From assembly GCF_016432865.1 (NCBI RefSeq), contig NC_067399.1, positions 120,404,001 through 120,468,000 on the forward strand: 64,000 nt of DNA, given 5' to 3'. Source of the stretch: Antechinus flavipes (taxonomy: Eukaryota). Under the pieces are notes generated by a model that made no database searches, had not been told where the DNA came from, and was given only the letters and a program-made list of their open reading frames with translations. Below are positions 8,311 to 63,895 of this stretch, one piece after another. Every line of letters begins with the position of its first letter. Within the stretch, counting starts at the first letter, position 1. The position numbers and the translations under genes are program-made.

Positions 8311-8550
<240 letters not shown>

Positions 8551-10650: not shown

Positions 10651-11447
10651 ATTCTTTTATTTACCAATTAATTCTCCAATTCAGACATAGACAATAATGG
10701 CAATCTCTACTTAGTCCAAAGTCATTTGCTTCTCGAATTAGATTTTGTCTCTGAACAATGTGGGGATTAAATTAATTGGCAGATGAGGTTCCTTCCAGCT
10801 CTCAAAGTCCATGAGAGAGACAGCACACTCCTGTGACCTAGTATATAAGGTATACTGGACTTGGTATCAAAAGATCTGGTTCAACTCCAGATAATAGCTC
10901 TTACTAGTTGTGTGACCATGGACAAAATCACTTTATCTTTCTAAACTCTTCAATGTTTCCATTTGCTAATGGGGACAATAAGAAAGTATATCTTACACTA
11001 GGGGCTATTGTATCAAAAGCCTTAAATATGTTTTTTTAGGAGGAGGTTGTGTTGTTGCTAGAAGAGTAAGTGTGTGCCTTTTGGTGAAGTTGAGTGGATT
11101 TTATGGATTATAAACCATTATTACATGGGTACATTGAGTGACAGCAACTAAGTCGGACTGAGCAATAGTCAGTTTAATTAGCATCATTTGTATCATGTGC
11201 TACACAGGTCACCTCCTATGCTGCCACAAGGTGTATGCTGAGTTAATGGGAGGAATGAGCATTCTTACCCCAGTCGGAGTGAGATCAGAAGAAAAACACT
11301 GGTCCATGTATTTTCCATCATCCACTAGTCATTTTGTTCTTCTCTCTGTCTTGTCCACAAAGGTGCATGGCATCTTACTGCTCTTGACTATTCCTGATGG
11401 TTTGGAGGTTAATTTTGTTTTCTTTGTTTGTTTGTTTGAATCTACAG

Positions 11448-11527
11448 AACTCTCCCATCCCTGCTAAGCTTCCAGAACCAGTGAAAGCCAGTGAGGCAGC
11501 TGCGAAAAAAACCCAGCCAAAGGCCAG
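11448..11527 (+). CDS. AAK1: AAK1 exon 10-equivalent: [26 protein letters not shown](R)
   Basis: tctacAG|AAC acceptor, CAG|GTAAAA donor, 80 nt, phase 0 to 2. Confidence 0.97.
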
Positions 11528-12107
11528 GTAAAAACTATTTGGTTAAATTCTTCATTTCTCAGTGGGAGCAGTCAGGGTGATAATCTGCCCCAGAACCAAG
11601 GGGGCACTTGCAATCTGCAGGAAACTCTTTGAGGTGATCATATCTTTGCAGTAGGTAAAAAGTCATGACCTATGATTTTATCAAGGTAAGGATACTTCCA
11701 GTGTGTACATTCTATCTACCAGTGCTGATGAGTATATGATACTTAAGAGAGTTAGCTGGGCTAATTAAATGACTTATCTGTGATCACACGTCTAGTGCAT
11801 CAAGTACATTTTCAACATAGATTTTTTCTAACTCCTAAGACCAGCCACACATAAGTCCACTCTGATACCTTCTGTCCCTTAAAGTGACCATAAAATAAAA
11901 ATGATTTTCCTAATATAGCTACCAAAACATCTCCATCTAAGAGTATTGTCCCTTGGAAGCAATCCCATTGGAATGCATATACTTAACTCCATTGAGGCTG
12001 TTGGTGGATCAGACATTCCTGAACATGACTATCCTTTGACCCTTGCTTTCAAAGGTTTTTATTAGCAGCTGAGTGTTATAGACCTGGAATCAAGAAACTT
12101 GGGTTTG

Positions 12108-13357: not shown

Positions 13358-14883
13358 GCTCTCCTCAAAAACCCTACTTTTAACTTTTACTAGATATATA
13401 AGTATAGGCAAATCATTTTTAGCATTTTTGAGCCCTCATTTTCCCCTTTTGTAAATGAGGAGAATACTGGTATTATCTACTTTACAAGATTAATAAAGTA
13501 ACGTAGGGAAGCATTTTGCAAGCATTAAAGCAAATGCTAAATGATAGCTATGGTTATTTTTATTCTCTGAAATTTTGAGGACCAGCTCTCTACACAGCTT
13601 AAAAGCAATGAGAAATAACAGTGGGATCCCATGTATTCAGAAACAGGTCAGAAGTGGGACTCTTGGTTTGGCTGCTGTGTTAATTGAATATCTTCTGTGT
13701 GTCAGGCACTGTGGTAGGTCTAGGGATTCAAAGATAAAGGCAAGAGTCCTGCCTTCGGGAAGCTTATATTCTCTTGAAGTAAATAACATCTACCCTCAAA
13801 AGTAAATAAAACATATTGCTAAAGTAAGTACAAAGTAATTGTCAGGAAGTGGTCCCAGCAACTGGAGAAAGCAGAAAAAACATCATGTAAGACAGAGCAT
13901 TTAGACTTGAACATTGAAGAAAAAAGCAGATTGGAGGCATTCATATTATTAGCTCAGCCCACGCCCAGCTAATGATATTAAGTCAATCCATTCTGCCTTC
14001 ACCTCTCCTACATGTCTACCCAAAGGGCAGACTTGTAGTACAGCTTATGCATTAAGCATTTTTGACAAGATCCCATCTGCCCTCTGGGAGCAAAGCCATG
14101 TGGCTAGTATCAAGTTAAATGGGAGTCGTGAGCGCTGCCTTTTCCAAAAAGAGCAAGAATGCACAGAAATGCCTCAAAGCCCTTTCCCTGGACAATCCTT
14201 TATTTCTCTAGCTTCACCTGCTGATGGAGAGACCTGTTTTTCTCCAAAGAGAAGACTGATTTCCATTGCTTGTCAGCCTGACAGTAGATGTAATTAGATT
14301 GGTATTCTTTATTTTTGTGTCTGTGACTATTTATGGCAGCTGGCCTGAATAATCTCTTTGATTTCAGAAAGTTTTGGCAGGAGTTGGGATGGTCTAATTT
14401 TGTCAGAGGTTCTGAGACCTCCTAGTCACACCTGAGAAGATGGAAAAGCACTCAGAAAGTGTTGTCAGGGATGCTTTTGTCACTAGTCTTGTTGTAAGCT
14501 AGGTCTTAAAACCTAACCTCATTGGATTGCATGAGAACTACATAAAATACTGTGCCCAGGGACAGCCAGAACACTGGATTAGATCCATGGTAGCTTCATT
14601 CCTTTCTCACGTAGAGAATTTGCTTGCTTTAACTCATGTGAGCACAGCCATCTCTATATTTTAAGGGCTAGTTTAAAAATACCTAACTAGAAACCCAGAC
14701 ACAATCAGTTATTAGTTGACTGTCTACAGCCTCAAAGGGGAAGGAGTGTGGTATCTTCAATAGAATTATTGGCAAATAGCTGTTTGGACATTTTGATCAC
14801 AGGAAAAATCTTTTCTCAATACCCTTCCACAAATATGCATCTTTAATTTCTACTTCTAACTTGATTTTTTAAAACTTTCACAG

Positions 14884-15038
14884 GCTGACGGATCCTATTC
14901 CTACAACAGAGACGTCAATTGCACCTCGCCAAAGGCCAAAAGCTGGACAGACCCAACCGAACCCAGGAATTCTCCCTATCCAGCCAGCCTTGACACCTCG
15001 AAAGAGACCCACTGTTCAGCCCCCAGCTCAACCTACAG
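14884..15038 (+). CDS. AAK1: AAK1 exon 11-equivalent: [51 protein letters not shown](G)
   Basis: ttcacAG|GCTG acceptor, CAG|GTGAGG donor, 155 nt, phase 2 to 1. Confidence 0.97.
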
Positions 15039-15200
15039 GTGAGGAAATTGGTCAGCTATAGTGGCCTAATTTACCTTGTCACCATCATGGGTAGCAAAGT
15101 TTTACCAGATGAGTTTACCTAAACTGGGAGGGAGAATGGAGACTTTAAGGCTTTAAGAATAGGTCTGATGGCATCATATTGTTCCTATTGTCACTCCTTG

Positions 15201-21033: not shown

Positions 21034-22056
21034 CCAAATTGTTTTTCAAAAAGAATAAACCAATAAAAATAAACTCTACTAACACTGCACACAGTTTTCC
21101 ATCTGTCAGTTTCCTCACCTAGCATGTTCTCTATAGTTTGGAATTCCTAGGTATTCTTTATTCTTATTTATTATTATTAATGACCAGTAGTTCAGTATAT
21201 CATACTGGAAAATGGCAAGGCATGGACTAGCATCACTTCCTGTTGCTATATTCAAGTTGCCCAAAGTTCTGGACACATATATAATCCCTGATGAGCAGAT
21301 CTATGTTGACTTTTTTCCTGGTTGTTATTAAAAACTATGTGTCTCCCTTCCCCCCCCCCAAAAAAAAAGAACCCTATGTCCCATAGTGCCCACTAAGACT
21401 ATTCTGTTTTTGAAAAGATAACATTTGCAGTGCTCATTATTGTCCATTATCCATATTTTCAGTATAACAGTGGTCTCAAACTCAGACAGAAATGAGGTCT
21501 ACTGAATTATACATAATGATCTGGCTACATATTGATTTAGAAAATCACTGCGAATAGATAGTTCTAACCCAGTTTGTATTTATAGCCTATTTATTGTCTT
21601 TTTAAATAATAATTGGAGTTAAGAGAGACCTGGTTTCAAATCCCATATCTGACCCTTACCCATTATGTCATGATGGGGGTTGCACTGAAATTCTTTGAAT
21701 CTGAGTCTCTTGATCTGAAATTTGGAGGCAATACCTTATAAGATTATTCTGAGGCTCACTTGAGATAATTTATATAAAGCATTTGCAAACCCTAAAATAT
21801 TCTTTAAATTTCAGCTTTTATTATTATCATAAAGCTTAGAGAACTTTAAAATACTTTATAAATCTCAACTCTTGTCATTGTTATTAATATTATTCAGAAT
21901 GCAGGGGCAGGGTCCTAGGTCCTTATGCATCCAGTCACAATGTGACTGGCACTTGTTATCCCTTTGTTCTGATATCTTATAAACAAGGATGGTCATTTTA
22001 TCCAGAGGAGGATTTGTGCCCTAATTTTTTATTTATTTATTTTTTTTTAGTTGCAG

Positions 22057-22254
22057 GACCAAGTGTTCCAGCTGGCCTCCCTACCAATGTCCCTCAACCA
22101 AAGCCCCAGCCTTCAATTAGTCAGCCAGTCCCACAGGCTCCAGCCAAGCAGCCACAGGCTCCACCCACTCCACAGCAGACACCTTCCACTCAGGCCCAGG
22201 TTTTACCTGCTCAAGCCCAGGCCACACCCCAGCACCAGCAGCATCTATTCCTCA

Positions 22255-22297
<43 letters not shown>

Positions 22298-22394
22298 GCA
22301 GCAGCAGCAACAAGCCACCTTTTACCAGCAGCAACAGCCACAGTCACAGCAACAGCAGCAGCAGCAGCAGCAGCAGCTGGCACCAGCTCAGCAG
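22057..22394 (+). CDS. AAK1: AAK1 exon 12-equivalent, Q/P/A-rich with polyQ: (G)[17 protein letters not shown]...LFLK-Q19[12 protein letters not shown]10-LAPAQQ
   Basis: ttgcAG|GA acceptor (alternative AG at 22049-22050), CAG|GTAAGA donor. Lies inside ORF 21942-22517. 338 nt, phase 1 to 0. Confidence 0.95.
22257..22376 (+). repeat. Coding CAG/CAA repeats: Q19 (22257-22313), Q4, Q10 (22347-22376)
   Basis: Counted directly. Longest pure run is 8 CAG (22353-22376). Confidence 0.97.
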
Positions 22395-25912: not shown

Positions 25913-27838
25913 AAGATTTCTTAATTTTTCTCTTCTATGAAATTGGCATGACATTTGCACTCACTTATTCTACAGAAAATAAAAATACTTTATATTTGTT
26001 AAAGGGAGTAATTATTATTCAGTGATAAAAATTTCATCATCTTTTATCCCTCATCTCTACACCTTCATTCCCAGCTTACAATCCCAATATGTTTTCAGTG
26101 GTTGCCTAGTTCCTGGGCCCTGAGTTTGATTTAGTTTTATGTTTTAGTTTCATTTACTTAAGTTTCAGATCTCATCTGTCAAGATGATAATGATAACAGT
26201 ATTTACATAGCATTTTAAGGTTTGCAAAGTACTTTATAAATACTATCTCAGATTATCCATACACACCTCTGGGGTTTAGGTGCTATTATTACTTGCATTT
26301 TACAGAGGAGAAAACTGAGGCAGACAGAAATTAAGTTATATGTCTGGGGTTACATTTGAACTCCAGAATCCAGATCCAGCTTTCTGTCTAGTGTAACACT
26401 TGACTGATTTCAGTCATTATAATGAGGGCTGAAATGTTTATGGAATGGACTCGATAGTAAAGAAGAATCACTTTCAAGGACTAGGTTAGTTACTACATAA
26501 AGATGAGAGTGGTGAAGTGCAGTTTCCCTCATGATGGGGATGGAGATCCATAGATAGAATAATGTTCATTCTCGATTACTTTCCATAAAGTGTAGAAAGA
26601 GCTTCACACTGTGAATTCAGTGACAGGAATTCTAATCTGGCTCTGCCTTTATTTAGCTTTGTGTTCTTAGGCAGACATGTCATCGAACTTTAGTGATTCA
26701 GTTTCTTGATTTATCCCATGATAGGCAGGATGTTTAGTGTAGTTGAAATGAGGATAAATTGAAATAAGCCGTGAAAATCTTTTGAATAGCCCTCAGTATT
26801 TTCCAAGCATAAATTGCCTTTGTTGTTGTTAGTTATTTTAATATTTGAAGAAGTTGTAATTTGTGTCTCTGGGCAATCTCTGCAGGCTTTTTTGGAGTCT
26901 TCTTTGAATGTAGCTTCATAATTTATCCCTTATTGACCAACTCCTTCAGCTTGACACCACTAATCTTCAAATGGTAGACATGCAATTCATAATTGGGCCA
27001 TCCTCAGATTCTTTCCATCTTAATAAGACTTGTCAAATCTTGTGTTTTGTTACCATAAATCCCCAAGAACCCAGAATTGTTTCCATGCCCCAGAGAAGCA
27101 CCAAAGTTGCACATTAATAAGGGTTTGTGTTGTGTTGTTTTTAATAATAATTTAATATTTAATAATAATTCATTGAGGCTACCAATGCAAGCTGTGGCCT
27201 TAAGTCTGATCCATTGGACATTGGAAAAAGTATTGGACTTAGAATCAGAAATTTGAATTCTGAGTTTGAAGCCTGGTCAGTTTATTATTCCCTGGAGACA
27301 AGTCCCTTCAATTCAACAAACATTTATTAATTGCCCACCACACACAAGACACTGGGGTTAAGTGAGCCCTGGAGTGAGCCAGCACTTAAACTCTGAATAT
27401 AGGGGGGGAAATAAAGTGGAAGAAATATGAGGAAGGAGAGAACACTTAACTAGGGAGATTGAGGAAGGCTTTATGGAGAAGGTGATGTTTGTTTGGTGAA
27501 ATAGGATATGTGAAGGGGAATGATGTGAAATAAGGCTAGAAAGGTAAACTGGAATCAGATTATTCTATTTGATCTGAGTGGCAATATGGGATCAAAAGAA
27601 GTTTTTTTAGTCTGATCCTACTGTTTCCTTTTCTGTCAAATGAGAGAAATGGTCTAGATGATTGAGAAAGCTCTCTTCCTACTCTGTTTACATACTACCT
27701 CCTTAGCTGCAAGTAGATATTTTCCCAGGGCTTCAGTCTCTCTGAATTAGGGTTAGGTATGATTTAAGGCTGTCTCCTTTGGGGATACAGTCCTAGGGTC
27801 AAGCTTTTGCTCATCATCTTGTCTTGCTGGTCCCCCAG

Positions 27839-28087
27839 TTCCAGGTGATACAGCAGGGAGCCCAGCAATCAGCAATTGCTCAGTTGCTTGGGCTACCCCA
27901 AGGAGCCCCCAGCAGCTGCTGATGTCGAACTTCTATCAACAGCAGCAGCTGCTGAAAGTTCAGCAGCCGCACTACAGCAGAAGACAGTTGTGGCAGCTGG
28001 ACAGCCGAAGCAACAGGCTCCCTCCAACCCCAGCCACAGGTGCAACCGGCTGTAGCCCAACAGCCAGCCCCTGCCCAGGATCCCATG
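27839..28087 (+). pseudogene. AAK1: Degenerate AAK1 exon 13-equivalent (pseudo-exon)
   Basis: tcccccAG|TTC CAG acceptor is intact. Homology to human exon 13 (FQ..[23 protein letters not shown]...AAGQ...QPAPAQ.P) is spread over three frames. TGA at 27920-27922 in the entry frame. Donor position reads ATG|ATAAGA. Confidence 0.85.
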
Positions 28088-31000
28088 ATAAGAATCAACC
28101 TGGGCTGAGAAACAAAGGCAGAGGAGGAAGCAACGTGCAGTGAGAGTTAGGGGAAAGGCAAGAGAGGCAGAACTGTCTGCTGAGTGGGGAATGATCTGGC
28201 CTGGGAGTTGGGAGACCGGGGCTGTGGACTCTCACGCCCCCAGTGATGCTGGTTGTCCTTAAGGCTGAGGCAGGTGCCCTCCTTTAGAGAGGTAATAGTC
28301 GTTGCTCTTCTTACGGTCCCATCTGAGAAACAGAATGTTATGTAGGCTTTTGAGGTAAGGTCTTCAGGGAGTAAAGGGCTTCTAAGAGAAGACGTAAGAG
28401 AAAGGGGATGACTCGTATTTCACTCTGTAATGGCTTCCACAGCATCCCCTAGTTTGAGAGCTTTTTTCACAACCAACCAATAAGATAGGGCAAACAAGAT
28501 AAATAATCGCATCATTTCACAGGGAAGAAACTGAGGTTTGAAATCATATATGTCTTAGTGGAAGAAATGGGACTCAAGCCCAAGATTCTCTAACCCCAAA
28601 TTTAGAATCTTCCTGCACCACAGAACTCTCAAGCGAAGTAGCAAGGTGACCTTATTGCTTCTGTTACCATTTCCATTTGGAAATGAAGACTTCAGTAAAG
28701 AACGAGTATTCCTCTTCAGGAAAAATTGCCTATTGTTTTAAAAGGACCTCTTTTTTTTTTTTTTCTTGAGATACATGAGCCTTGACACTGCTGGAAATGG
28801 TTTTTCTCCTTGCCTCAACAGTTACCTGATGTCAACTTAACAAGCAGCTTCCTTGCAAGGGCTTCTGCTTGAACACAGGCTCTTTATGATCCAGACAAGA
28901 ACTTAGGGCAACTGAGCATTCAGTAGGAAACAGCATTAGAATGTTCATTCTTGGTTTTAGATGTGAGGAATATCCTTCTGACAGGAGTCAGGCTATGTCC
29001 AGTACCATTCTCTGAGACATACAGGCATGTGACCTTTCAGAATGGAGCATTTCAGTTTCTGTAGGCTCAGCTCTTTGATAGAAATCCTGTCCAAAAAAGT
29101 ATCTAAGCATCATAGTGTTGAAGAAGATAAAGGGCATAGTGCATTAGCTTTGGAGAAGACCGGGGGTTGAACACTGGATCTGATAATTTACTACTTGCAT
29201 AACCTTGGACAATCCCTTGTACACCTCTGAGTCTTACTTTCTGCCTCAGTAAATTGAGGACTTTAGCAACTACCTAATCTGAGCATTTGCAGTAAATTCT
29301 CATTTACTTACCCAGCCATCTCAAAAGAGGTCTTTTAGTGCCCTCCTTACCAAGATGTATTCTAACAAACTCCCTCCTATCCCCACAATGGTGACTCCAC
29401 ATACTTGAAAACTTTATTTTCAAAAAGAATAGGGCAGCTAATGGTGATGTGACTAGAGTGCGAGATTTGGAATCAGCAAGACTTGAAATCAAATTCTGTC
29501 TCAGAGACTTATTTCCTAGCTGTGTCATTCTGACAAGTTTTTGCCTTCCTCAACATGTTTCTTCATCTGGTAAATGATGATAATAATAGTGCCTGCCTCC
29601 TAAGCACTTATGTGAGTGAAAAAATGAGTTAGCTAACATTTGCAAATCTTAAAGTCTTATATAAAAATGCTAGGTACCATCATCATCATCATCATGGTTT
29701 AGAATTAGTAATTAAGATTGAAGTAGCTTAAATCAAGCTTTTGGTCCAGGAAAAAAGGATAAGGAGAAAATGAAGAGATAATTTAAAGGATTTTTCACTG
29801 AATTATAACTTTATAATAATTGCAAAGTATTCCCTCTCAACAACTTGATGTTCTTATTTAAGAAAATTAAGTCTCCCAGAGGTGATAAAATTTTTATGGT
29901 CACAGCTAGTAAAGAAAAATCTGGGATTTGAATCTAGGTTTCCTAATCTTCCAAACTAAAAAAGTAAGGGTTATCAGGAATGGAAGATGGAGTCATATGA
30001 CTCTAAATGATTGAGACTGAGAATTGTGGAATAAAATGGACCCCAAAACTGGGGTCAATACCAGGAATGTCTATGCTCTGTAATATGTGAAACTTAATGA
30101 GATTTCTTACTGCTGGAAAAGGTTAACTAGCTAAAGGAAGCCTTTTTAGGAATAACTCTCATAGCTAGAATGATGTGTTGACAGTTTGATTCGATGCTTT
30201 AATTCTAAAACCCCTGATATAAACTATGAAAAGCACTTTTAATATAGAACTCTATTGTCTCCCTCTTATTAAAAGTCTTAACTCATAAAAAGGAGGAGTG
30301 GTCATGAGCTAAAAGGAATACCTGTCTTTAAATTGTTTTTACTCATTCATTTATTTGAGACAATTGAGCTTAAATGATTTGCACCCTTCATATCTCCTGT
30401 TGTTTCTAAATTCTATAGAGTCCTTCTCCAGTGCCTCATTGTAGTATGTAGATGATCCTGGACTCTTACAAGATCTGCCAACAGAATTATAGATCCTCAT
30501 TGGAACAGCTTCAAGGATGGACTGTGTTTCTGTCTTCTGGAAACAAGATTCACCACATTCTGAGAGATGTATTATTAGGGTGGGCCTAGGGAGACAATTC
30601 ACAAAGGATATCTTCATAGGTGTGTGTTTGGATTCTACATAGGTGGGAGGAGTAACTATGCTGATGAAACTATGGATCTTTAAAGTACTGAACTAAATTG
30701 CTTTGAAAGAGAGTGGTGTTCAATAATATATTCATTGCCTTCACCCTTTCCTTGGCAAAGCATGTGGTCTTCCTGGAAAAGTATGGAAATGAGCAGATTT
30801 TTTTATTGATAAAGAAAATGTCTTTCTAAGAACTGATTTATAGATACAGAATCAGAAAATGGCAGATTTGTCTCACCAATTTATTGATCCTATATTGCAT
30901 GACCATGAGCTATAGAGAAAACAGTTTTTTACCTAGCAGCCAGATTACTATAGGGGGATATATATGACCAGATAGCACTATATAGGAACCTTCTCTCTGG

Positions 31001-36118: not shown

Positions 36119-36474
36119 GATTTTTTTTTAAGAAGTGACTTGTCCAGGATTACACAACTAGTGTCACAAGCTGAATTTGAACTCCTGACTCAGTGTTCTG
36201 TCTACTGAGCCACTTTGCTGCCTCTTCTAGCCCATAGTAGATGCTTAATAATTGCTAATATACTAATTGATTGTTCATGGTTATTCTATGAAGGTTTCTT
36301 GAGAGAGTTCACATTTATGTGTCATCAGCTATTCTTCACATCTCACTTGATATTTTCAGAGCCCATTTATCCAGTTTGAGATGGAAAAAAGAGGGGATTT
36401 GGGTTATTCAGGTCCTTATGTAAATTTTCAAACTGTTCTTTCTTTCTTCTTTTCTTCCTCTTCTCTTTTCTTAG

Positions 36475-36707
36475 CAGAAGCAAGCACCAATAAGACAACA
36501 AGCAAAGGCTCAGACTACTCCACCCCCTGCCATCCAGGGGCAGAAGCTTGGATCTCTCACTCCTCCATCATCCCCCAAAGCCCAGCGGGCTGGACACAGG
36601 AGAATCCTCAGTGATGTAACCCACAGTGCAGTTTTTGGAGTTCCTGCCAGCCAGTCTACTCAGTTGCTTCAGGCAGCTGCAGCTGAAGCAAGCCTCAATA
36701 AGTCCAA
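36475..36707 (+). CDS. AAK1: AAK1 exon 14-equivalent: (QK)[75 protein letters not shown](K)
   Basis: Long U/C tract then TAG-CAG-AAG tandem acceptors (start 36475, 36478 or 36481), CAA|GTATGT donor. Contains the HxRxxS NDR-kinase motif HRRILS. Confidence 0.96.
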
Positions 36708-36810
36708 GTATGTGCTTCTTTTCTTTCTCTCTGCAGAGCTTGGGAGTCAGACTTTCAGCCAATTAAAATATATCTTGCATATCGTATTTCTTTACAAACA
36801 TCTTGAAAAA

Positions 36811-44400: not shown

Positions 44401-44587
44401 GAAATGGTGAGACTGAGTGAAAGATACCTTTCACTCTCTTCCCTTTCCAATCTGAATACCCTACTCGTCCAAAGTCTTATAGACTTCCTAAAGTTCAGCA
44501 TTGATCACATCCCTAAAGCTTAAAATCCTATATTCCTCTTGATCAGCTTTTACTCACAACTTTTGTTTTGTGTCGGGGAACTTTTAG

Positions 44588-44745
44588 GTCTGCATCCACT
44601 ACTCCATCGGGTTCTCCCCGGACCTCTCAGCAAAACGTTTACAACCCTTCTGAAGGCTCCACTTGGAATCCCTTTGATGATGACAATTTCTCCAAACTCA
44701 CAGCTGAGGAACTGTTGAACAAAGACTTTGCAAAACTTGGCGATG
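44588..44745 (+). CDS. AAK1: AAK1 exon 15-equivalent: [52 protein letters not shown](G)
   Basis: cttttAG|G acceptor, ATG|GTAAGT donor, 158 nt. WNPF / WxxF-acidic endocytic motif. Confidence 0.97.
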
Positions 44746-45625
44746 GTAAGTGGCAAATGTCCAGTTATCCATGCCAGTAAATATCCCACAAAAGAAACCA
44801 AGTAATATGTGCTCCCATATTTATTTTGTAGATGTACCTTATTTTTTATATATATACACATATATGTATATATATAATATATTGGCTATATTATATATAA
44901 TTATATATTTATATATGACATTTCTGTGTGTTTCCCTTGCCAACAAATTTTTGCAAATAAAACCTTTTAAGTTTGAGGGAAAGAAAGTATTTTTGCCTAG
45001 TACACTAAATCCACACTATTCTCAAGAAATTCTGATTACCTATGCTATCCTTTTTTTTTTTTTTTTTTTTGGTATGCTTGTGACTTTGGACAAGTTAGTT
45101 AAACTCTTTTGACCTCAATGTCTTTTTATAAAATGAAGGAATTAGAGATCACTTTCAGCTCTAGTTCTATGATCTTTTTATCCTAAGAAATGCATTTTGT
45201 AATCAGTAAACATATTTAATTGATTGAATATCTGACCTATGTTGAAAATCATTTGCAAAAGACTACTTGGTCTCTTCTCAAATTTTCATCAAGAATGACT
45301 TCAAATAATTGTAAATTATATTCAAATATGAGATTATAGGGAGAAGATAGGTATATAGATGGGTTTGTTTATATTGTCTTCTCAAATGCCCTTTTTAAAT
45401 TGTTTCTTTGGAAGGATAGAAATGACAAAGAGACAAGGTTAGGATTCACTAGAGGATTTCCAAGAAATTTTGGATAGACACTTCTTGGGAATGAAGTAAA
45501 GAGGATTCTTGTCTAGGTATGAGTTGTACTAGAGGCTTCTATATCATTTCTAGCTTTTTGATTCTGTAACTCTGTAGAGTATATCAGTAACCAGTTGTTT
45601 CATATAAGTTAAGAGGGGCATGTGT

Positions 45626-46583
45626 CATTCTCCAATTGATAAATGGTCAAAGGATATGAGCAGACAATTTTCAGATGATGAAATTGAAACTATTTCCATT
45701 CATATAAAAGAGTGTTCCAAATCACTATTGATCAGAGAAATGCAAATTAAGACAACTTTGAGATATCACTACACACCTATCAGATTGGCTAAGATGACAG
45801 GAAAAAATAATGACAAATGTTGGAGGGGATGCGGGAAAACTGGGACACTGTTGCATTTTGGTGGAGTTGTGAACGAATCCAACCATTCTGGAGAGCAATC
45901 TGGAATTATGTCCAAAAAATTATCAAATTGTGCATACCCTCTGATCTAGCAGTGTTTCTACTGGACTTATATCCCAAAGAGATCTTAAAGAAGGGAAAGG
46001 GACCTGTATGTGCCACAATGTTTGTGGCAGTCCTCTTTGTAGTGGCCAGAAATTGGAAACTGAATGGATGCCTGTCAATTGGAGAATGGCTGGGTAATTT
46101 GTGGTATATGAATGTTATGGAATATTATTGTTCTGTAAGAAATGACCAGCGGGATGAATACAGAGAGGCTTGGAGAGACTTACATGAACTGATGCTAAGT
46201 GAAATGAGCAGAACCAGGAGATCATTATATACTTCAACAACGATACTGTATGAGGATGTATTCTGATGGAAGTGGATTTCTTTGACAAAGAGACTTAACT
46301 GAGTTTCAATTGATCAATGATGGACAGAAGCAGCTACACCCAAAGAAAGGACACTAGGAAATGAATGTAAACTGTTTGCATTTTTGTTTTTCTTCCCAAG
46401 TTATTTCTATCTTCTGTATCTAGGATATACTATGACATATTTAACATGCATAGGACTGCTTGCCATTTGGGAGAGGGGATGGAGGGAGGGAGGGGAAATG
46501 GAACAGAAGTGAGTGCAAGGGATAATGTTGTAAAAAATTACCTTGTCATGGGTTCTGTCAATAAAAAGTTATTTAAAAAAAAA
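45626..46583 (+). mobile_element. 5'-truncated LINE-1 (ORF2 C-terminus, 3' UTR, A tail)
   Basis: ORFs 45620/45817 encode SPIDKWSKDM..REMQIKTTLRYHYTP..KCWRGCGKTGTL. AATAAA at 46560-46565. Perfect 15-bp TSD AAGAGGGGCATGTGT (45611-45625 and 46584-46598). Confidence 0.95.
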
Positions 46584-47790: not shown

Positions 47791-48254
47791 ACCATATAAA
47801 ATGGGTTAGGAATTAAGAACTTTTAGAATTCCATTTAAAATGGAAAATATGTTCTGTATAAGAACTTGATGCCTTTTTCACTGTACAGATAATAACAATA
47901 ACATATTTAAATATCCCCTAAAAATTTATAAAGTGATTGTCTTATAACAATCTTGTGAGTTAGATAGTACAATTATCATTCTCCTCATTAATAGATGAGG
48001 AAGCTGAAGCTTATTGTTGAAACTGGAACTAAAGTTACTTGACTTTTGCCACACAAACTTTTCTAATTTCTGTTATTTTGCCTGCTTAGAGATTTTCCTC
48101 CCATTGCTTCTGACTTCTGAATTGTATTCCTCAAATTTGAGCTTGCCAGATGAGTTATATTGTCATAACATCTGAGAATCAAACAGGAACATCTAGAAGA
48201 TCTAGAATATTGGATGTGTACACTCATAGCTATTTGTATGTTTTGCTACTCTAG

Positions 48255-48377
48255 GCAAACCTCCTGAGAAACTTGGTGGTTCAGCAGAGAGTTTGATCCC
48301 AGGCTTTCAACCAGGTACAGCCACTACTCAAGCAGATGCTTTTGGCTCCTCCTCCTTTTCTTCTGGAACTGGAACAG
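48255..48377 (+). CDS. AAK1: AAK1 exon 16-equivalent: [40 protein letters not shown](A)
   Basis: ctactctAG|GC acceptor, CAG|GTAAGG donor, 123 nt, phase 1 to 1. Confidence 0.95.
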
Positions 48378-52772: not shown

Positions 52773-54009
52773 TGTAAGACATATAATCCCAATAAGTCTT
52801 CCTTTATATGGAGCAGAGGTCATGAGGGACCTCAGAGATCATCTAGTCAGATAGAATCCTAATGAGTTAAGTGCTAAAAATCACACAGGTAATTACCATC
52901 AAAGGCAATATTTGAACCAAGGATTTCTTGACTGCAATGCCAGTGTCCTTTGTATTATATCATTTTGGTTTCGAGATCTCTATGTTTGTCTCGTTTGAAA
53001 CATACACACACTCTGCTTTAAATACTGATTCCTCTAAGTATTTTCATTATCCCCCATGCCTCGAATTTTCTCCCTTCATCTCTATTTCCTGATTCCTTTA
53101 AGTCTCAACTAAAATCCCACTGTCTATCCTTTCTTGATTCTCTGTTATGTAGTCCTTTCCCTCTGTTGGTTATCTCCAATTTATCTTGTACACATCTTAA
53201 TTGTTTACAGTTGTTTGTGTGCTGCTGTCTCTCCAGAAAGCATGGGCGGGCTGACTTTTGCCTTCCTTTACATCCTCAGAACATAGTAGGTGATTAACAA
53301 ATGCTTGTTTGCTGACTTACATTTTAATACGATTATAAACAATATGCCAGGAATATCCTACTGATTTGAGAGAAATCATACCCCTATCTCAGTTCATTCA
53401 GCAAGTATTTTTCCCTTCTGATGTGATTCAACCTAGTCTAGTTGGGAAAATACTCCACACTCAGAATGCAGATAATCATAGGAAACAATATATGATTAGA
53501 TGTGATCACATCAATAAAGGAAGTGCCTAGGCCAGTGAAAATCAAGCTCTGTAAAATGTAGAAAAAAGGATATAGTTAAGTACCAAAACACCTGATCCAG
53601 ACAGTAAGTCTATGGGAGTTCCAAGAAGGGGGAGAGAGATGGATTAATAGTCCTTCCTTCTGGAAGAGGTGAAATTCAAGGATTCATGTAAATATTCTGC
53701 TAGTATCACTATGGTGACGAGATGTCTGCCTACAGAAGTGTTCTATGATCCAGTTGTAAACACTGAAGGACCACTGCAGTAAGACTGGTTTAAATCTAAA
53801 CAGATTGTCCCTTTTGTCCTCTGTTCGTCTCTCCTTCTCTCCTTCCCTTCCCTCCAATACTATTGCTCCTGCTTAGACCACAGGAAGCCTTGTTGGCTCT
53901 TAGGTAAAATAATTATCTGGGCAGGAAAAACCTTACATAGCTTCTTGATGTTTTCTGCTTTTCTCTTTCTTTTTCTCTCTTTATCTTTGGCCACTACTCA
54001 ACCTTCCAG

Positions 54010-54105
54010 CTGAAAAAACGAAAGATGTGCTTGGTCTGGATGCTAGCCCTCCTCTTCTGAATGTGTCTGATCCTTTCATCCCTCTCCCAGTACCTGATGC
54101 ACCAG
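54010..54105 (+). CDS. AAK1: AAK1 exon 17-equivalent: EKTKDVLGLDASPPLLNVSDPFIPLPVPDAP(E)
   Basis: Long pyrimidine tract, ttccAG|CT acceptor, CAG|GTAAAG donor, 96 nt, DPF motif. Confidence 0.95.
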
Positions 54106-55955
54106 GTAAAGGAAACTGTGACAGGACATCGGGGTGAAATGGGCATAAATACCCATTTCCACATTGTTTTCCAAAAGCTTAATTTTTAAGGTCTCAAGAA
54201 GAGAATTTGGATTTGTGAAAGGGCTGGGGAGAAAGAGAAAAAGGATGAAAGCCAATGTGAGACTGTACTGCTTCCAGAACATTGCTTCAAGGGTGTGTAA
54301 GAAATGACTTTGTGGCATCTGCAGAGGAATAAGGTCACACTAAATTAATGACATACCTCACGTATGCACATTCACTCATTGCCTTACCCAACCCTATCCC
54401 CCCCACCAATTTTGAAAACAATACCAAACGGGACAGAAGAAAATACTGACTTCTGGAAATCGGAGACTTTGGCTTTAGACTCATCTCAGCCTCTCAGCTA
54501 GCTGTGTAATTCTTGGATAATTCACTAAACTCCTTTGGGCTTCAAAAAAATGCAGAATTCCAATATTGAAAGGAAAGGTTTTCCAAACCACACATGCAAA
54601 TTAATTTCTTCTGCAACATACCTCACAAGTAGTCCTCTAACCTAAGTTTGAAAACCCCCCAGGAAAAAGAACTCACTACTTCTCAAGGTAGCCCATTCCA
54701 TTTAGAAACGGTTCCTCAAAGGCAGAAACAGTTCCTCATTTTTGTCTTCATATCCTGGAGTGCCTAGCACAGTGATGGGCACATCAAGTCTCAGTTTGCC
54801 TTTTGGTGTCTTTCAGCCCTTGCTCTTAATTATCTGTTCTGGGGTCAAGCAGCTTCTTCATTTTCTTCAACTAGGAAACAAAAGGGCTATGTTATAAATG
54901 CTGTATGTCCACAATCAGGTATTGGTCTGTAGGGACAGGATAACAAGGCTGATATTGTGTCTCTGACCTGCCTGTTCTACTCTTTCTAATGTGTGCAGTA
55001 CCCCCTTCCTGTCAGCTCACATGTTTGCTGACATGTTGGACTACAAGACAAACCTTCCTCTCAAGTCTAAGAGGAATGACTGAACCATAAATATACTTGG
55101 CTGCTAAGTGGCCTTACAGAAACTGCTTTCCCCCCTCACTCTCAAGATCATCTATTAATTTATAGAAGTGTTGCAGGTGGTTCTATTGGAGAGGACCCCC
55201 TACATGAACTATATCATAGATATTTTAATTATTGAAGTGTTATTATTTGTGAGTGCTGCACATTATTTGTCTCAGTCCCTAACTTGGAAACTAAGAGACG
55301 ATCTCTGCGTTTGGAAGGATTTTGGCTGAAACCCAACATTTCCATTTGCAAGCAGGCTGTCTACAATGTCTCAAAAGACAGTTTTATTGGAAAGAAAGAA
55401 AAATGAACTATTCTGCCTATTCTGCAACAAATAAATTATAGGCCTAGTGTGGGGGACCCTTTCACATAGGGCCTTCCCTGCACTGCTTTCAGAATTATCC
55501 TCCTGAGACTTGTTAAATAAATTCCCAGTCATGTAGCACCTGAAGGATTAGAGAACTTTCTTCAAAGCAAGCCTGTGAGATTGATAATGCAAATATTACT
55601 TCTCCTACTTTACAGACAAGGAAACCAAGTCCCAGGAGTTTAAGTGACAAGAACAAGACTTAGAACTTGGAGGGTCCTTAAAGATTATTTCATTCCCTTG
55701 ATTTTATAGAGTAGAAGAAAGAGAGGAGCAGGGTCAGAAAAGGGAAATGATTTGCCCAAAGTTATACAAAACAAGGTTGGGATTAAAATCCTCCGACTCT
55801 TAATTTGTCTTTCTACTAGAGTCACATAGCTTAGAAGCATCAGAACTTCGATTCACACTTGAAACTCCTGATTCAGCACTCTCTCTACTATATTGCATAA
55901 CTTGGACTTCTCTTGACCAGTGTCTTCTTTAGGCTAACACAGTTGAATTCAGAGA

Positions 55956-56665: not shown

Positions 56666-58870
56666 AATACTATTAGCTTTGTGATCCCAAGTAAGTTGAT
56701 CCTCCTGGCCTCCTTTATCTTTAAATTGGGTATAGTAATAGCATCATCTCACAGAATTGTTGTGAGAATCAAATGAGATAAATGAAGAAAAGTGCTTTTT
56801 AAACTTTAAAGCACTATATAAACATCAACTATTATTGTATATGAAAGCATCATAACCTTGATACACGTTAGAGATTTCTCCAAGCTATACTGCTTACTCT
56901 ATATGATCTTTTTCAAACCATATATCTTTCCCCAATGTTCAGTTTCCCACAGGAACTTTGGGACTTTGGACTGAATGATTTCTAAAGTTCCTGCAAATAA
57001 GCCAAATTTCTCTGGATGATAATCTTTACTCTGAAAACTTGTAGTCTCAAGAGGCCTAGTATCAAATCCTGGCCATACCAGGCCATGTGACTGAGCAAGA
57101 TGATGATGATGATGATAACAACAATAGTAATACTGACTTCTCCTTTGGCAACCTAGTAGCCCACCATTTTCAGTCACTCACCATATTAGAGCTGGACCTA
57201 ATACATTTATACTTGATAAGTCAATCTACTGTAGGTTAGAATTCCTCAAGCAATCCACCAACTTCAGCCTCCTCCATTAACAGCATCACTAGCATGTACC
57301 ACCATGCCCAGTCTCCTTAAAGGTTTCTAGATTAATTTGCTCACAACCTTGTGAGTAACTAATATAAATATTCTTCTCCATTTTTATGGATGAAAAACCA
57401 ATAGCAGATTGAAGTGACATGGCTTGTCCACAATCATACAGAGGGGATTTGAACACAGGTCTCCTAACCTCAGATACTCTTGCCATACCCTCTAGACCAT
57501 TTTGGAAAGAAAAATATTTTGTAAACTTTGCTTCTGATGATGCTGTTTCTACATTCACAAATTGACTGAGGTGTCATAGTCTTGTAAAAGATAATAAGTC
57601 ACATTTCAAGGTTTACAAAAGGTTTTCATTAGGACAGCAACCCTGTGAGGTAGCAAATACAAAGATTTCCCCTCTACCCACCTTCATTTTACTGACTTAA
57701 CAACTTTAAGCAGTTTTGTTCATGATCATCCAGCTAGCATATGCTTAGTGCAGTATATGAATCAAGGTCTTTTGACTCCCAAATCCAGCATCCTGTTCAA
57801 AGCTATATTTCCTATTTCTGTTCTTATCACTCTAGCACAAGAATAGCACAAATAATTAAGCACCTGATATAAAATACTTCACAACTATAAACACTTGCAT
57901 AGGTGTCAATGATGTTTTAATTGTATCTTAATTAAATTTTGCAAAATGCTGAGTTTGGAGGTTATGGGGAAAAAATATTGCTGTGCCAATATTGCCTTTG
58001 TAGTTAGGTTGAAAATGAAGTATTTCTGATGGACATTTGGAAAGTTTTAAAATTATGGAATCCAAGAACTGGGTGTGACTAGTTCGATCAATCTCTTATC
58101 ATGACACAGACATCCTCTCTATAGCAGCCCTGATAATGAGTACTGATCCTTCTTCTGCTTCCATGTTCCCTAATAAGGAATAGTCTGCTCCACTGTTGAA
58201 TCTTTCTGATTGTTTAGGGAGTTCTTTCTATAATGAGCCAAAATTTGCCACCTTTAAATGATTGGCCCAAATTCTGTCTTTTGGAACAACACAGAATAAG
58301 TATATTCCTTCTTCCACATGACGGGCAACCTAAAAGAAAAGCTTTTCTGTAGCTAACATTTAGCATCTACTTGATGCTAGGTACTGTGATAAAGTGCTGC
58401 GGTGATGATGATAATGATAATAATAATTATATAATTAATAACTGATGCATTAGTTATATTACCTCCCTCAGCCAAGTCTTTTGTTCTCCAGACTAAATGA
58501 TCTTTTCCACTATGATTTGTTCTCCATTCAAGATCTTTGTTACCTCTCACTTTTCAGTGTTTCTTTCCCCTGAATTTTTTTGCCTTCTAAAATATAGCTT
58601 CTCAGCTCTTTAGAATATTCACATAACTTGATCCTAGTTCTCAAAACCAGAGAAACATGTGGCTTTTATTTTCTCTTTTTCAAACTGTACTTTTTTGATT
58701 CACTGATTTCTGCTCGTGGTTACTCTGTTATTAGTGATGTTCCCATGTGCTAGGATTCCCCCTCAGTTTGAAGAAACCTTGATGTATCTTTTAAAGTTGA
58801 GAAATGACAAGTTTTACTTTTGTTGTTTCATTGATTTTTCTCCTTTCTCCTTCCTTTCTCTCTAACCCAG

Positions 58871-58972
58871 AAAAGCTTATCGAGGGGCTCAAATCTCCCA
58901 GTACTTCACTTCTCCTTCCTGATCTCTTACCTCTGGCAGATCCCTTTGGTAGCACTTCAGATGCTGTGAATG
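58871..58972 (+). CDS. AAK1: AAK1 exon 18-equivalent: [33 protein letters not shown](G)
   Basis: aacccAG|AA acceptor, ATG|GTAATA donor, 102 nt, DLL and DPF motifs. Confidence 0.96.
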
Positions 58973-62392: not shown

Positions 62393-62494
62393 GAAAAGTT
62401 GATGTTGCTGTTGAAAGTCTCATACCAGGACTGGAGCCCCCAATGCCCCAGCGCCTCCCATCTCAGACTGACTCTGTCACTTCCAACAGAACAG
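62393..62494 (+). CDS. AAK1: AAK1 exon 19-equivalent (long isoform): [33 protein letters not shown](D)
   Basis: gccaaAG|GA acceptor, CAG|GTTAGT donor, 102 nt, phase 1 to 1. Confidence 0.95.
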
Positions 62495-63895
62495 GTTAGT
62501 AAAGTTTCTCCTCAAATCAGAGTATTTGGTCATGAAGATAAGATTAGTCAGCTTGGGGGTTTTGTCCTGTCTATAAACCCAAGCTCCTTCTAATGAGGAG
62601 AGCTAGTCTGTCTCCTACCCACATTAAATCGAATTAAGGATGTGATTTTTGTGCAAACTGGTTCCTTTTACTGTCCACAAGATTAGCTGCTATTAATTAT
62701 GCTCTCATTTACAGCTTATGGTTGTTCAGTAACTTGCTTGCTATATGAAGTATAAATTTTGTTTATTGTAGTGATTCTATACCACTGTTTCCCTCAGCTT
62801 TCTTATGAAACTTATAAAACAGCTCTCTTTTTTCCTAGTTAATTAAGTAGCCAAACTATTCTTTTCTCTTCAGACATAGCCTGTTTTAACTTTATTAATT
62901 AGGTTCACAAAAACATGAGTAAGTGAATCAGCATTGTAAAAGGCAATTAACACAAACCGCCTTATAAATGAATGAGTGACTGGCCTAGCAACATTACTTC
63001 AGGTTTTTACAATCTTATAGGAGTTTGGTTATGATGTGGTGATTTTTGTATGGAACACCATTGGTTGGTACAACCTTATGAGGAAAAAAGCAAACCTTTG
63101 TCACTGTGAATATATTAGACCAATTTTATTTGCTCTTAAAGTAGATATAACTAGAAGTATACATCTGAATTGTGTTCCTTAGACACAACTTTAATCACAT
63201 ACATTTTTTTAAAAATTGATTTTGAATGTAATTTTTTTTGGGGGGTGGGGGTGGTGAGGAATTAGAATTTGTTTAAATACTCAATACAATTGTGCCCTTG
63301 ATACAAAGTTGAGAAATCTTGCAGGAAAAGCACTGAATTTGTCACCTAATATAGAGCAATGGAAAATGCCTGATTAAATTAGAAATTTGTTTTGTGGAGA
63401 GGATAGAGACAGAAATTGATCTACATTCAATCTAGGTATAAATGTTGGGTTTGATACTCTAATGTTACGCCTTTTCACAGCCTTTAAAAACGGGCTTGAG
63501 AGAAGCTTTGATGAGCAGCATTCCTGATAAAGGGATGACAATTATGGATGGGTTAGGACTTCAGTTCATGTTCTATAGAAAGTAATAGCCCTGGGAGAAA
63601 AAGTCTTATATATTTATCCACTAATGAATGATAAGGCATTTATTAAACAACTGCTTAAAACTGCACTAAGACTTTTAGGACACTAGGCAAAATTCTTTGT
63701 AGAATTTTAAAGTTTTATATAAATGTTGTTTGCTGTTGTTGTTAAGACCTTGGATTTTGTTGTTGTAGTTGTTGTTGCTGTTGTCAATTGTATCAGTGAG
63801 TGTAAAGCCAGTAACCTAAAGGTTGACAGTCTAATCCCATTCTCCTGTTATATATGCCATTTCATGCTCCCGGCATTCCTTTCTTCTGGACTCAG

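What the first reader, a model, noticed from the sequence alone, without database searches (positions are those of the whole stretch)
27839..28087. AAK1 exon-13 homologue is frameshifted three times and carries a premature stop: an apparently dead cassette exon
Seen: from the intact acceptor the frame reads [27 protein letters not shown] (TGA 27920-27922). Homology to human exon 13 continues only by adding one base at each of three places: the C5 run 27906-27910, about 27966 (cagcag[g]ccgca), and the C3 run 28020-28022. The restored peptide is [84 protein letters not shown]. The other 11 exons (1596 nt) have no indel. Exon 12 ends and exon 14 starts in phase 0, so skipping gives an intact protein (...LAPAQQ|QKQAPIR...). 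Amino-acid divergence is also high (LLGLP vs recalled human FPVVS). Knowledge: I recall a rodent Aak1 isoform lacking an in-frame exon in this region. Inference: an alternatively spliced exon became constitutively lost in this lineage, removing about 84 aa of the Q/P/A linker. All three lesions are -1 in or next to homopolymers, so long-read assembly error is a real alternative.
Basis: partly seen in the sequence, partly recalled or inferred. Interest (0 to 1): 0.85.

Follow-up and report, generated by a model that had tools for sequence, protein, structure and literature searches.

The report
Broken AAK1 linker exon, possibly dead
One in-frame exon of the endocytosis kinase gene AAK1 reads as unusable in this assembly (three one-base frameshifts, two stop codons and a destroyed splice donor), so the animal probably makes a slightly shorter but intact protein; sequencing error could not be excluded here.

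Summary
Homology to AAK1 exon 13 runs through frame 1, then 3, then 2, then 1 (27839-28087). That is three -1 shifts, with TGA at 27920 and 27953 in the entry frame. There is a fourth lesion that this finding omits. The same scan logged it separately as s1-209027. The 5' splice site reads ATG|ATAAGA where a eutherian genomic contig has GCG|GTGAGA, a G>A at donor +1. The other 11 AAK1 exons in the window (about 1,596 nt) are open and have AG/GT sites. Exon 12 to exon 14 splicing is in frame.

My best reading (about 0.5) is a truly dead exon. The donor loss forces skipping, and about 84 residues of the Q/P/A-rich linker are lost.

The main rival (about 0.35) is assembly error. All three indels are one-base deletions in or beside C/G runs. 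No nonsense change has arisen in the restored frame, and I found no excess amino-acid change. Unchecked notes on this genome also report many one-base frameshifts in conserved genes.

No marsupial orthologue, reads or RNA-seq could be reached. The scan has not noted this on other DNA. Interest is low to moderate.

The parts
22057..22394 (+). AAK1 exon 12 homologue (Q/P-rich, Q19 and Q10 runs). It ends on a codon boundary with the donor CAG|gtaaga.
27776..27838 (+). Upstream intron flank still alignable to a eutherian contig. It holds the pyrimidine tract and an intact acceptor, cccccag.
27839..28087 (+). Exon 13 homologue, 249 nt. Homology runs frame 1 > 3 > 2 > 1.
27902..27910 (+). First net -1 shift. 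It lies in the C5 run 27906-27910 or in GGA[A]GC.
27920..27922 (+). First in-frame TGA of the entry frame.
27953..27955 (+). Second in-frame TGA of the entry frame.
27964..27968 (+). Second net -1 shift: CAGCAG|CCGCA, where the eutherian contig has CAGCAGGCTGCC.
28017..28025 (+). Third net -1 shift, in or near the C3 run 28020-28022. The position is only known to within about 28008-28035.
28088..28089 (+). Destroyed 5' splice site: AT where the conserved donor GT should be (ATG|ATAAGAATC versus eutherian GCG|GTGAGAATC).
36472..36477 (+). Tandem acceptor tag|cag| of exon 14. Both choices are in phase 0.
36475..36707 (+). AAK1 exon 14 homologue. It is intact and 90-93% identical to eutherians.

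Best explanation
The exon 13 homologue is a truly dead exon in this animal's AAK1 gene.

Proposed mechanism:
1. The G>A change at donor +1 (28088) removes the site that U1 snRNA pairs with.
2. The exon can then no longer be defined, so exon 12 is spliced directly to exon 14.
3. Both junctions lie on codon boundaries, so the product is an otherwise complete kinase (...LAPAQQ|QKQAPIR...). It lacks about 84 residues of the disordered glutamine/proline/alanine-rich linker between the kinase domain and the C-terminal adaptor-binding part.
4. Once skipped, the exon is invisible to selection and picked up three one-base deletions.

Shown here: the lesions as assembled, the conserved position of the donor, the in-frame bypass, and the intactness of all neighbouring exons.

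Inferred: that the lesions are real in the animal, that skipping happens, the order of events, and that the shorter protein works.
For: - Four independent lesions fall in one 249-nt exon.
- None fall in the other 11 exons, about 1,596 nt. If three indels fell evenly over the 1,845 coding nt, all three would land here with P = 0.0025.
- The donor lesion is a substitution at the exact conserved position, so it is not a one-base deletion like the other three. The eutherian open reading frame P0149 reads ...AQEPA|VRISRRG (GTG AGA ATC), and the window reads ...AQDPM|IRINLG (ATA AGA ATC).
- No other in-phase, open donor exists apart from a 6-nt TTCCAG|GTGATA.
- Third codon positions differ twice as often as first and second positions in each piece's own frame. 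The exon was therefore coding for most of its history, and the breaks came late.
- The exon is of the kind most easily lost. It is phase 0-0 and lies inside the Q/P/A-rich middle region (PMC2173317; PMC10653628).
- Its length varies among amniotes, and it is absent from two fish AAK1 proteins.
- Nothing repetitive or extreme in composition surrounds it that would explain local misassembly. GC is 59% in the exon, there are no N runs, and there are no tandem or dispersed repeats.
Against: - All three indels are one-base deletions in or beside C/G runs. That is the usual spectrum of long-read consensus error. From general knowledge of pseudogene indels, a run of three such events is only a few per cent likely among natural frameshifting indels.
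- At the usual neutral ratio of substitutions to indels, three indels imply about 10% divergence. That predicts about 1.65 nonsense changes among the 27 Gln codons and others. None is seen, P about 0.19.
- There is no excess of amino-acid change on this lineage.
- Unchecked first-reader notes on the same genome list one-base frameshifts in many otherwise intact conserved genes. Some are clustered.
- No reads, transcripts or marsupial orthologues could be examined.
Confidence: 0.5

Rival explanations
1. Assembly artefact. The exon is intact in the animal. The three one-base deletions are consensus errors of a poorly polished stretch, and the donor A is a further consensus error.
For: - All three indels are -1 and lie in or next to C5, GG and C3/C4 runs.
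- The restored frame has no stop in 84 codons and keeps the conserved motifs AIAQ, [14 protein letters not shown] and PAPAQDP.
- No nonsense change is seen where about 1.65 are expected.
- There is no lineage-specific excess of amino-acid change.
- Unchecked notes on the same genome report one-base frameshifts in PIAS3, FGGY, CRYBG1, ACP7 and omega-globin. They also report three in TTC31, two in one ICAM1 exon, and a 6.2-kb segment holding all the frameshifts of its window.
Against: - It needs about 1% local error while 1,596 nt of neighbouring exons show none (P = 0.0025 if errors are spread evenly).
- The window has no gap, and there is no repeat or extreme composition at the site.
- The far more repetitive CAG-rich exon 12 is clean.
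- A substitution must also have hit one of the two donor bases. Substitutions are the rarer kind of long-read consensus error (general knowledge).
Confidence: 0.35
2. Hybrid. The donor G>A is a real and perhaps young or heterozygous allele that already causes skipping. Some or all of the three frameshifts are consensus errors.
For: - The substitution and the deletions are different classes of change.
- The absence of nonsense changes and of excess amino-acid change fits a very young loss.
Against: It requires two rare things at the same exon, a real splice-site variant and a local cluster of errors. Nothing ties them together.
Confidence: 0.08
3. The exon is still used. This could be as a stop-containing 'poison' cassette that lowers AAK1 output through nonsense-mediated decay, or through a non-canonical or edited donor.
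For: - The acceptor and pyrimidine tract are intact.
- About 60 nt of upstream intron is still alignable to a eutherian contig.
Against: - There is no GT at the conserved donor. ATAAGA does not match the U12 AT-AC consensus, and exon 14 has AG acceptors, not AC.
- Every other GT gives a stop-containing or out-of-phase product, except a 6-nt exon.
Confidence: 0.03

Closest known systems
Eutherian AAK1 exon 13 (residues about 506-594 of dugong P0081; genomic copy in contig L001, open reading frame P0149)
   Same: - It sits in the same position between the exon 12 and exon 14 homologues.
- It has the same acceptor and donor positions.
- Amino-acid identity over 81 aligned codons is 63%.
- The motifs FQ..., AIAQ, [14 protein letters not shown] and PAPAQ(D/E)P are shared.
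   Different: - The eutherian copies are open, 88-90 codons long, and flanked by AG and GT.
- The window copy has three -1 shifts, two stops and an AT donor.
- It also lacks the eutherian QQQQLATALHQQQLMTQQ stretch and has about 9 extra codons near the 3' end. Both are in-frame differences, and the first is shared with a sauropsid-like protein.
Fish AAK1 proteins (P0013, P0018)
   Same: They join the ...FFNPQQQ region directly to the exon 14 homologue with no exon 13 sequence. This is the architecture that skipping would give here.
   Different: In fish the exon may never have existed, or the gene models may omit it. Here a recognisable remnant is present.
Known AAK1 splice forms AAK1L and AAK1S
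   Same: They are alternative forms of the same gene that change the non-kinase part (PMC10653628; PMC3327670, which cites Henderson and Conner 2007).
   Different: They differ by an alternative C-terminal end with a second clathrin-binding domain, not by this linker exon. I found no paper describing skipping of exon 13.
Lineage-specific loss of an in-frame coding exon through a splice-site mutation (general class)
   Same: There is a donor +1 G>A, the neighbouring exons are phase-compatible, and secondary frameshifts lie in the bypassed exon.
   Different: Membership needs proof that the lesions exist in the animal and that transcripts skip the exon. Neither could be tested here.

Membership tests
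Orthologue of AAK1 exon 13 | It lies between the exon 12 and exon 14 homologues on the same strand, with no second copy. | tested here: met
   tblastn with P0081, P0120, P0040 and P0059 gives one hit only, at 27832-28123.
Orthologue of AAK1 exon 13 | Sequence similarity beyond composition, with a coding pattern of change. | tested here: met
   63% identity over 81 codons. Codon-position differences are 22%, 23.5% and 47%. The DNA alignment spans the exon plus about 60 nt of intron.
Functional coding exon | Open reading frame from acceptor to donor in the phase set by exon 12. | tested here: not met
   TGA at 27920 and 27953, and three frame changes.
Functional coding exon | Canonical AG acceptor and GT donor. 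| tested here: not met
   The AG acceptor is present. The donor is AT at 28088-28089, whereas all ten other donors in the window are GT.
Truly lost (dead) exon | Skipping keeps the reading frame. | tested here: met
   Exon 12 ends ...GCT CAG CAG| and exon 14 starts |CAG AAG or |AAG.
Truly lost (dead) exon | The lesions are present in accurate reads or an independent assembly. | not testable with these tools
   Exact look-ups of 14 window open reading frames, two metagenome scans and three protein searches found nothing from this or any marsupial species.
Truly lost (dead) exon | Transcripts join exon 12 to exon 14. | not testable with these tools
   No transcript data could be reached.
Truly lost (dead) exon | Signs of relaxed constraint beyond the disabling lesions. 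| tested here: not met
   No excess lineage-specific amino-acid change. No nonsense changes where about 1.65 are expected.
Long-read consensus error | The indels are one-base deletions at homopolymers. | tested here: met
   The contexts are C5 (or AA), GG and C3/C4.
Long-read consensus error | Errors are also seen in neighbouring sequence of known content. | tested here: not met
   The 11 other exons have no indel. The introns cannot be judged without a close relative.
Long-read consensus error | It explains every lesion. | tested here: inconclusive
   The donor G>A is a substitution, not an indel. It could be a rarer kind of error.
Poison (NMD-inducing) cassette exon | Both splice sites are functional around a stop-containing exon. 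| tested here: not met
   No usable donor.

The most novel reading that the evidence does not exclude
A marsupial lineage has fixed the loss of a linker exon of AAK1 that is kept in the sampled eutherians and in a sauropsid-like protein. That would be a natural 84-residue deletion in the Q/P/A-rich region between the kinase domain and the adaptor and clathrin-binding tail. It would show that this segment is dispensable in a mammal and give a dated example of exon death started by a donor +1 mutation.
Probability: 0.45. Interest if true: 0.35.

Novelty: new member of a known kind. Interest (0 to 1): 0.28.

Why it matters
If real, it is a clean natural deletion in the disordered linker of a kinase that is a drug target for pain and viral entry. 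It would say that about 84 residues of that linker are not needed in a mammal. It would also be a tidy case of exon loss through a splice-donor mutation followed by decay. If it is an artefact, it matters only as a warning that this assembly carries clustered one-base deletions that mimic gene and exon loss. That would bear on the other frameshift notes made on this genome.

Tried and rejected
Attempts to get marsupial AAK1 proteins:
- A full-length search with dog AAK1, scored on residues 440-660, listed only eutherians among its best 120 of 2,744 hits.
- A profile of exon 13 found a single eutherian genomic open reading frame.
- A search with the exon 14 open stretch found only non-marsupial fragments.
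- An attempt to build a scaffold-plus-window-exons profile gave a scrambled alignment and was dropped.

Attempts to get independent DNA of this species:
- Exact look-ups of 14 window open reading frames found none in the collection. The blank for the exon 13 frames therefore says nothing.
- Two exact-pattern scans of metagenome contigs were blank.

Alternative explanations tested and rejected:
- A recent non-3n tandem duplication does not explain the third shift. There is no self-similarity above shuffles.
- Alternative donors do not rescue the exon. Only a 6-nt exon is open and in phase.
- An AT-AC intron is ruled out because exon 14 has AG acceptors.
- Local repeats or low complexity are not a cause of misassembly, since none were found.
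- Further alternative exons in the window were sought with 1,275-1,313-residue isoforms, and none were found.

Literature: searches for skipping of this exon, or for any marsupial AAK1 report, found nothing relevant. The Henderson and Conner 2007 paper is not held.

I did not compute dN/dS against the eutherian. Synonymous sites are saturated at that distance, and the value would not date a recent loss.

Full report
**What is there.** The window carries the middle and C-terminal part of AAK1 on the + strand. tblastn with dugong AAK1 (P0081) finds twelve exon homologues: 8416-8517, 11439-11528, 14882-15040, 22053-22394, 27836-28123, 36481-36708, 44586-44750, 48254-48370, 54009-54110, 58867-58968 and 62395-62493, plus one that runs off the window end at 63895. 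Longer isoforms add no further exon. There are no N runs in the window.

**The observation.**
- From the acceptor cccccag|TTCCAG at 27839, frame 1 reads 27 codons and stops at TGA 27920. A second TGA follows at 27953.
- The similarity to AAK1 continues in frame 3 (27910-27966), then frame 2 (27966-28022), then frame 1 again (28022-28087).
- Each junction shares one base, which gives three net -1 shifts in 249 nt.
- The first deletion could equally lie in GGA[A]GC. The third is only located to about 28008-28035.
- I tested whether a non-3n tandem duplication could explain the third shift and found no self-similarity above shuffled controls.

**A fourth lesion.** The exon is followed by ATAAGA, not GTAAGA. 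To be sure that this is the ancestral donor position, I needed a genomic copy from another mammal.
- A profile search for exon 13-sized open reading frames returned one hit, P0149. It is encoded on two host-DNA contigs in ENA metagenome assemblies.
- P0149 reads ...LSPAQ|FQAVHP...PPPAQEPA|VRISRRG.
- The DNA alignment puts eutherian GCG|GTGAGAATCAGC against window ATG|ATAAGAATCAAC with no gap. The conserved donor G at +1 is therefore an A here.
- All ten other donors in the window are GT, and all acceptors are AG.
- Another first-reader note on this window, s1-209027, made the same point. I confirm it.
- Scanning every GT from 27839 to 28300 gives no other donor that is both in phase and free of stops. 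The only exception is a 6-nt exon, TTCCAG|GTGATA.
- An AT-AC intron is excluded because exon 14 has tag|cag| acceptors.

**Is the homology real, and when did the breaks occur?**
- Each of the four pieces aligns to the eutherian exon. Identity is 63% over 81 codons.
- The differences fall 22%, 23.5% and 47% on codon positions 1, 2 and 3. This is the pattern of a sequence that evolved as coding in the frame of each piece.
- The shifts are therefore late relative to the marsupial-eutherian split.
- The short middle part ([19 protein letters not shown]) resembles a sauropsid-like protein, P0007 (NFMQQLLVQKAASGQQK). The longer eutherian poly-Q/LATALHQQQ stretch is therefore not something lost here.

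**Does the protein survive?**
- Exon 12 ends ...GCT CAG CAG|gtaaga. Exon 14 starts after a tandem acceptor, tag|CAG|AAG. Both choices are in phase, so skipping gives ...LAPAQQ(Q)KQAPIR....
- Eutherian isoforms with and without the extra Q (AQEPAQIQAPV versus AQEPAIQAPV) show that the tandem acceptor is used elsewhere.
- The lost segment lies wholly in the glutamine/proline/alanine-rich middle region of AAK1 (PMC2173317; residues 312-630 in PMC10653628).
- Two fish AAK1 proteins join the flanking regions with no such exon.

**Real or artefact?**

*For a real dead exon:*
- Four lesions sit in this exon and none in 1,596 nt of neighbours. If three indels were spread evenly over the coding sequence, all three would land here with P = 0.0025.
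- One lesion is a substitution at a splice-critical base, which is not the usual long-read error.
- The exon is phase 0-0, disordered and variable in length, which is the kind most easily lost.
- Nothing around it (no gap, no repeat, 59% GC) suggests a hard-to-assemble spot.
- The far more repetitive CAG-rich exon 12 is clean.

*For an artefact:*
- All three indels are one-base deletions in or beside C/G runs. That is typical of consensus error. From general knowledge of pseudogene indel spectra, it is only a few per cent likely for three natural frameshifting indels.
- At the usual ratio of substitutions to indels, three indels go with about 10% neutral divergence. That predicts about 1.65 new stop codons in the restored frame. 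None is seen, P about 0.19.
- Counts against the sauropsid outgroup show no excess change on this lineage. Window-unique versus eutherian-unique changes are 3-4 versus 2-4.
- Exon 13 identity to eutherians (61%) is like that of the other low-complexity exons (66% and 65%).
- First-reader notes on the same genome list one-base frameshifts in many conserved genes, some of them clustered (PIAS3, FGGY, CRYBG1, ACP7, omega-globin, TTC31 x3, ICAM1 x2, and one 6.2-kb segment). These notes are unchecked, and I could not test them. They do raise the prior for local consensus error.

*Weighing.* The outcome depends mostly on how strongly errors cluster in this assembly, which I cannot measure. I put a real dead exon at about 0.5 and a pure artefact at about 0.35. 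A real donor variant combined with artefactual frameshifts gets about 0.08. Continued use of the exon gets about 0.03.

**What could not be done.**
- No marsupial AAK1 sequence, no reads and no transcripts were reachable.
- Exact look-ups of 14 window open reading frames were all absent from the collection. The blank for the exon 13 frames therefore carries no weight.
- Two metagenome scans were blank.
- The literature held nothing on skipping of this exon or on marsupial AAK1.
- Whether the exon is alternatively spliced in other mammals remains open. All 119 amniote proteins that passed my motif test contain it, but they were selected by a query that included the exon.

**Verdict.**
- If real, this is an ordinary kind of event, lineage-specific loss of an in-frame linker exon, in an interesting gene.
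- If not real, it is one more sign that this assembly carries clustered one-base deletions.
- A read pile-up over 300 bases would settle it.

Noticed in passing
window 36472-36477: Exon 14 has a tandem (NAGNAG-type) acceptor, ttag|cag|AAG. Eutherian AAK1 isoforms with and without one extra Gln at this junction (AQEPAQIQAPV versus AQEPAIQAPV) show that both sites are used elsewhere.
   Followed up: partly
window 27839-27850: The first six bases of the dead exon are followed by a fair donor, TTCCAG|GTGATA (7 of 9 consensus positions). With the intact acceptor this could in principle give a 6-nt in-frame micro-exon (Phe-Gln). The eutherian contig has no GT there.
   Followed up: partly
window 22254-22379: Exon 12 encodes uninterrupted runs of 19 and 10 glutamines in mixed CAG/CAA codons. 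These are longer and purer than in the eutherian proteins compared, where prolines interrupt the runs.
   Followed up: no
window 48254-48377: This exon carries an in-frame insertion of four residues (PGTA) relative to eutherian AAK1. It is only about 74% identical, and the next exon (54010-54105) is about 65% identical. The C-terminal linker exons evolve fast here without any frame damage.
   Followed up: partly
window 45608-46263: Long open stretches in two frames look like remains of a LINE-type retroelement reverse-transcriptase region inside an AAK1 intron.
   Followed up: no
same genome, other windows (notes s1-189055, s1-200959, s1-204782, s1-198845, s1-200963, s1-184946, s1-184872, s1-204759): Many first-reader notes report one-base frameshifts in otherwise intact conserved genes of this assembly, some of them clustered. 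Taken together they suggest a genome-wide check of consensus quality before any of them is read as gene loss.
   Followed up: no
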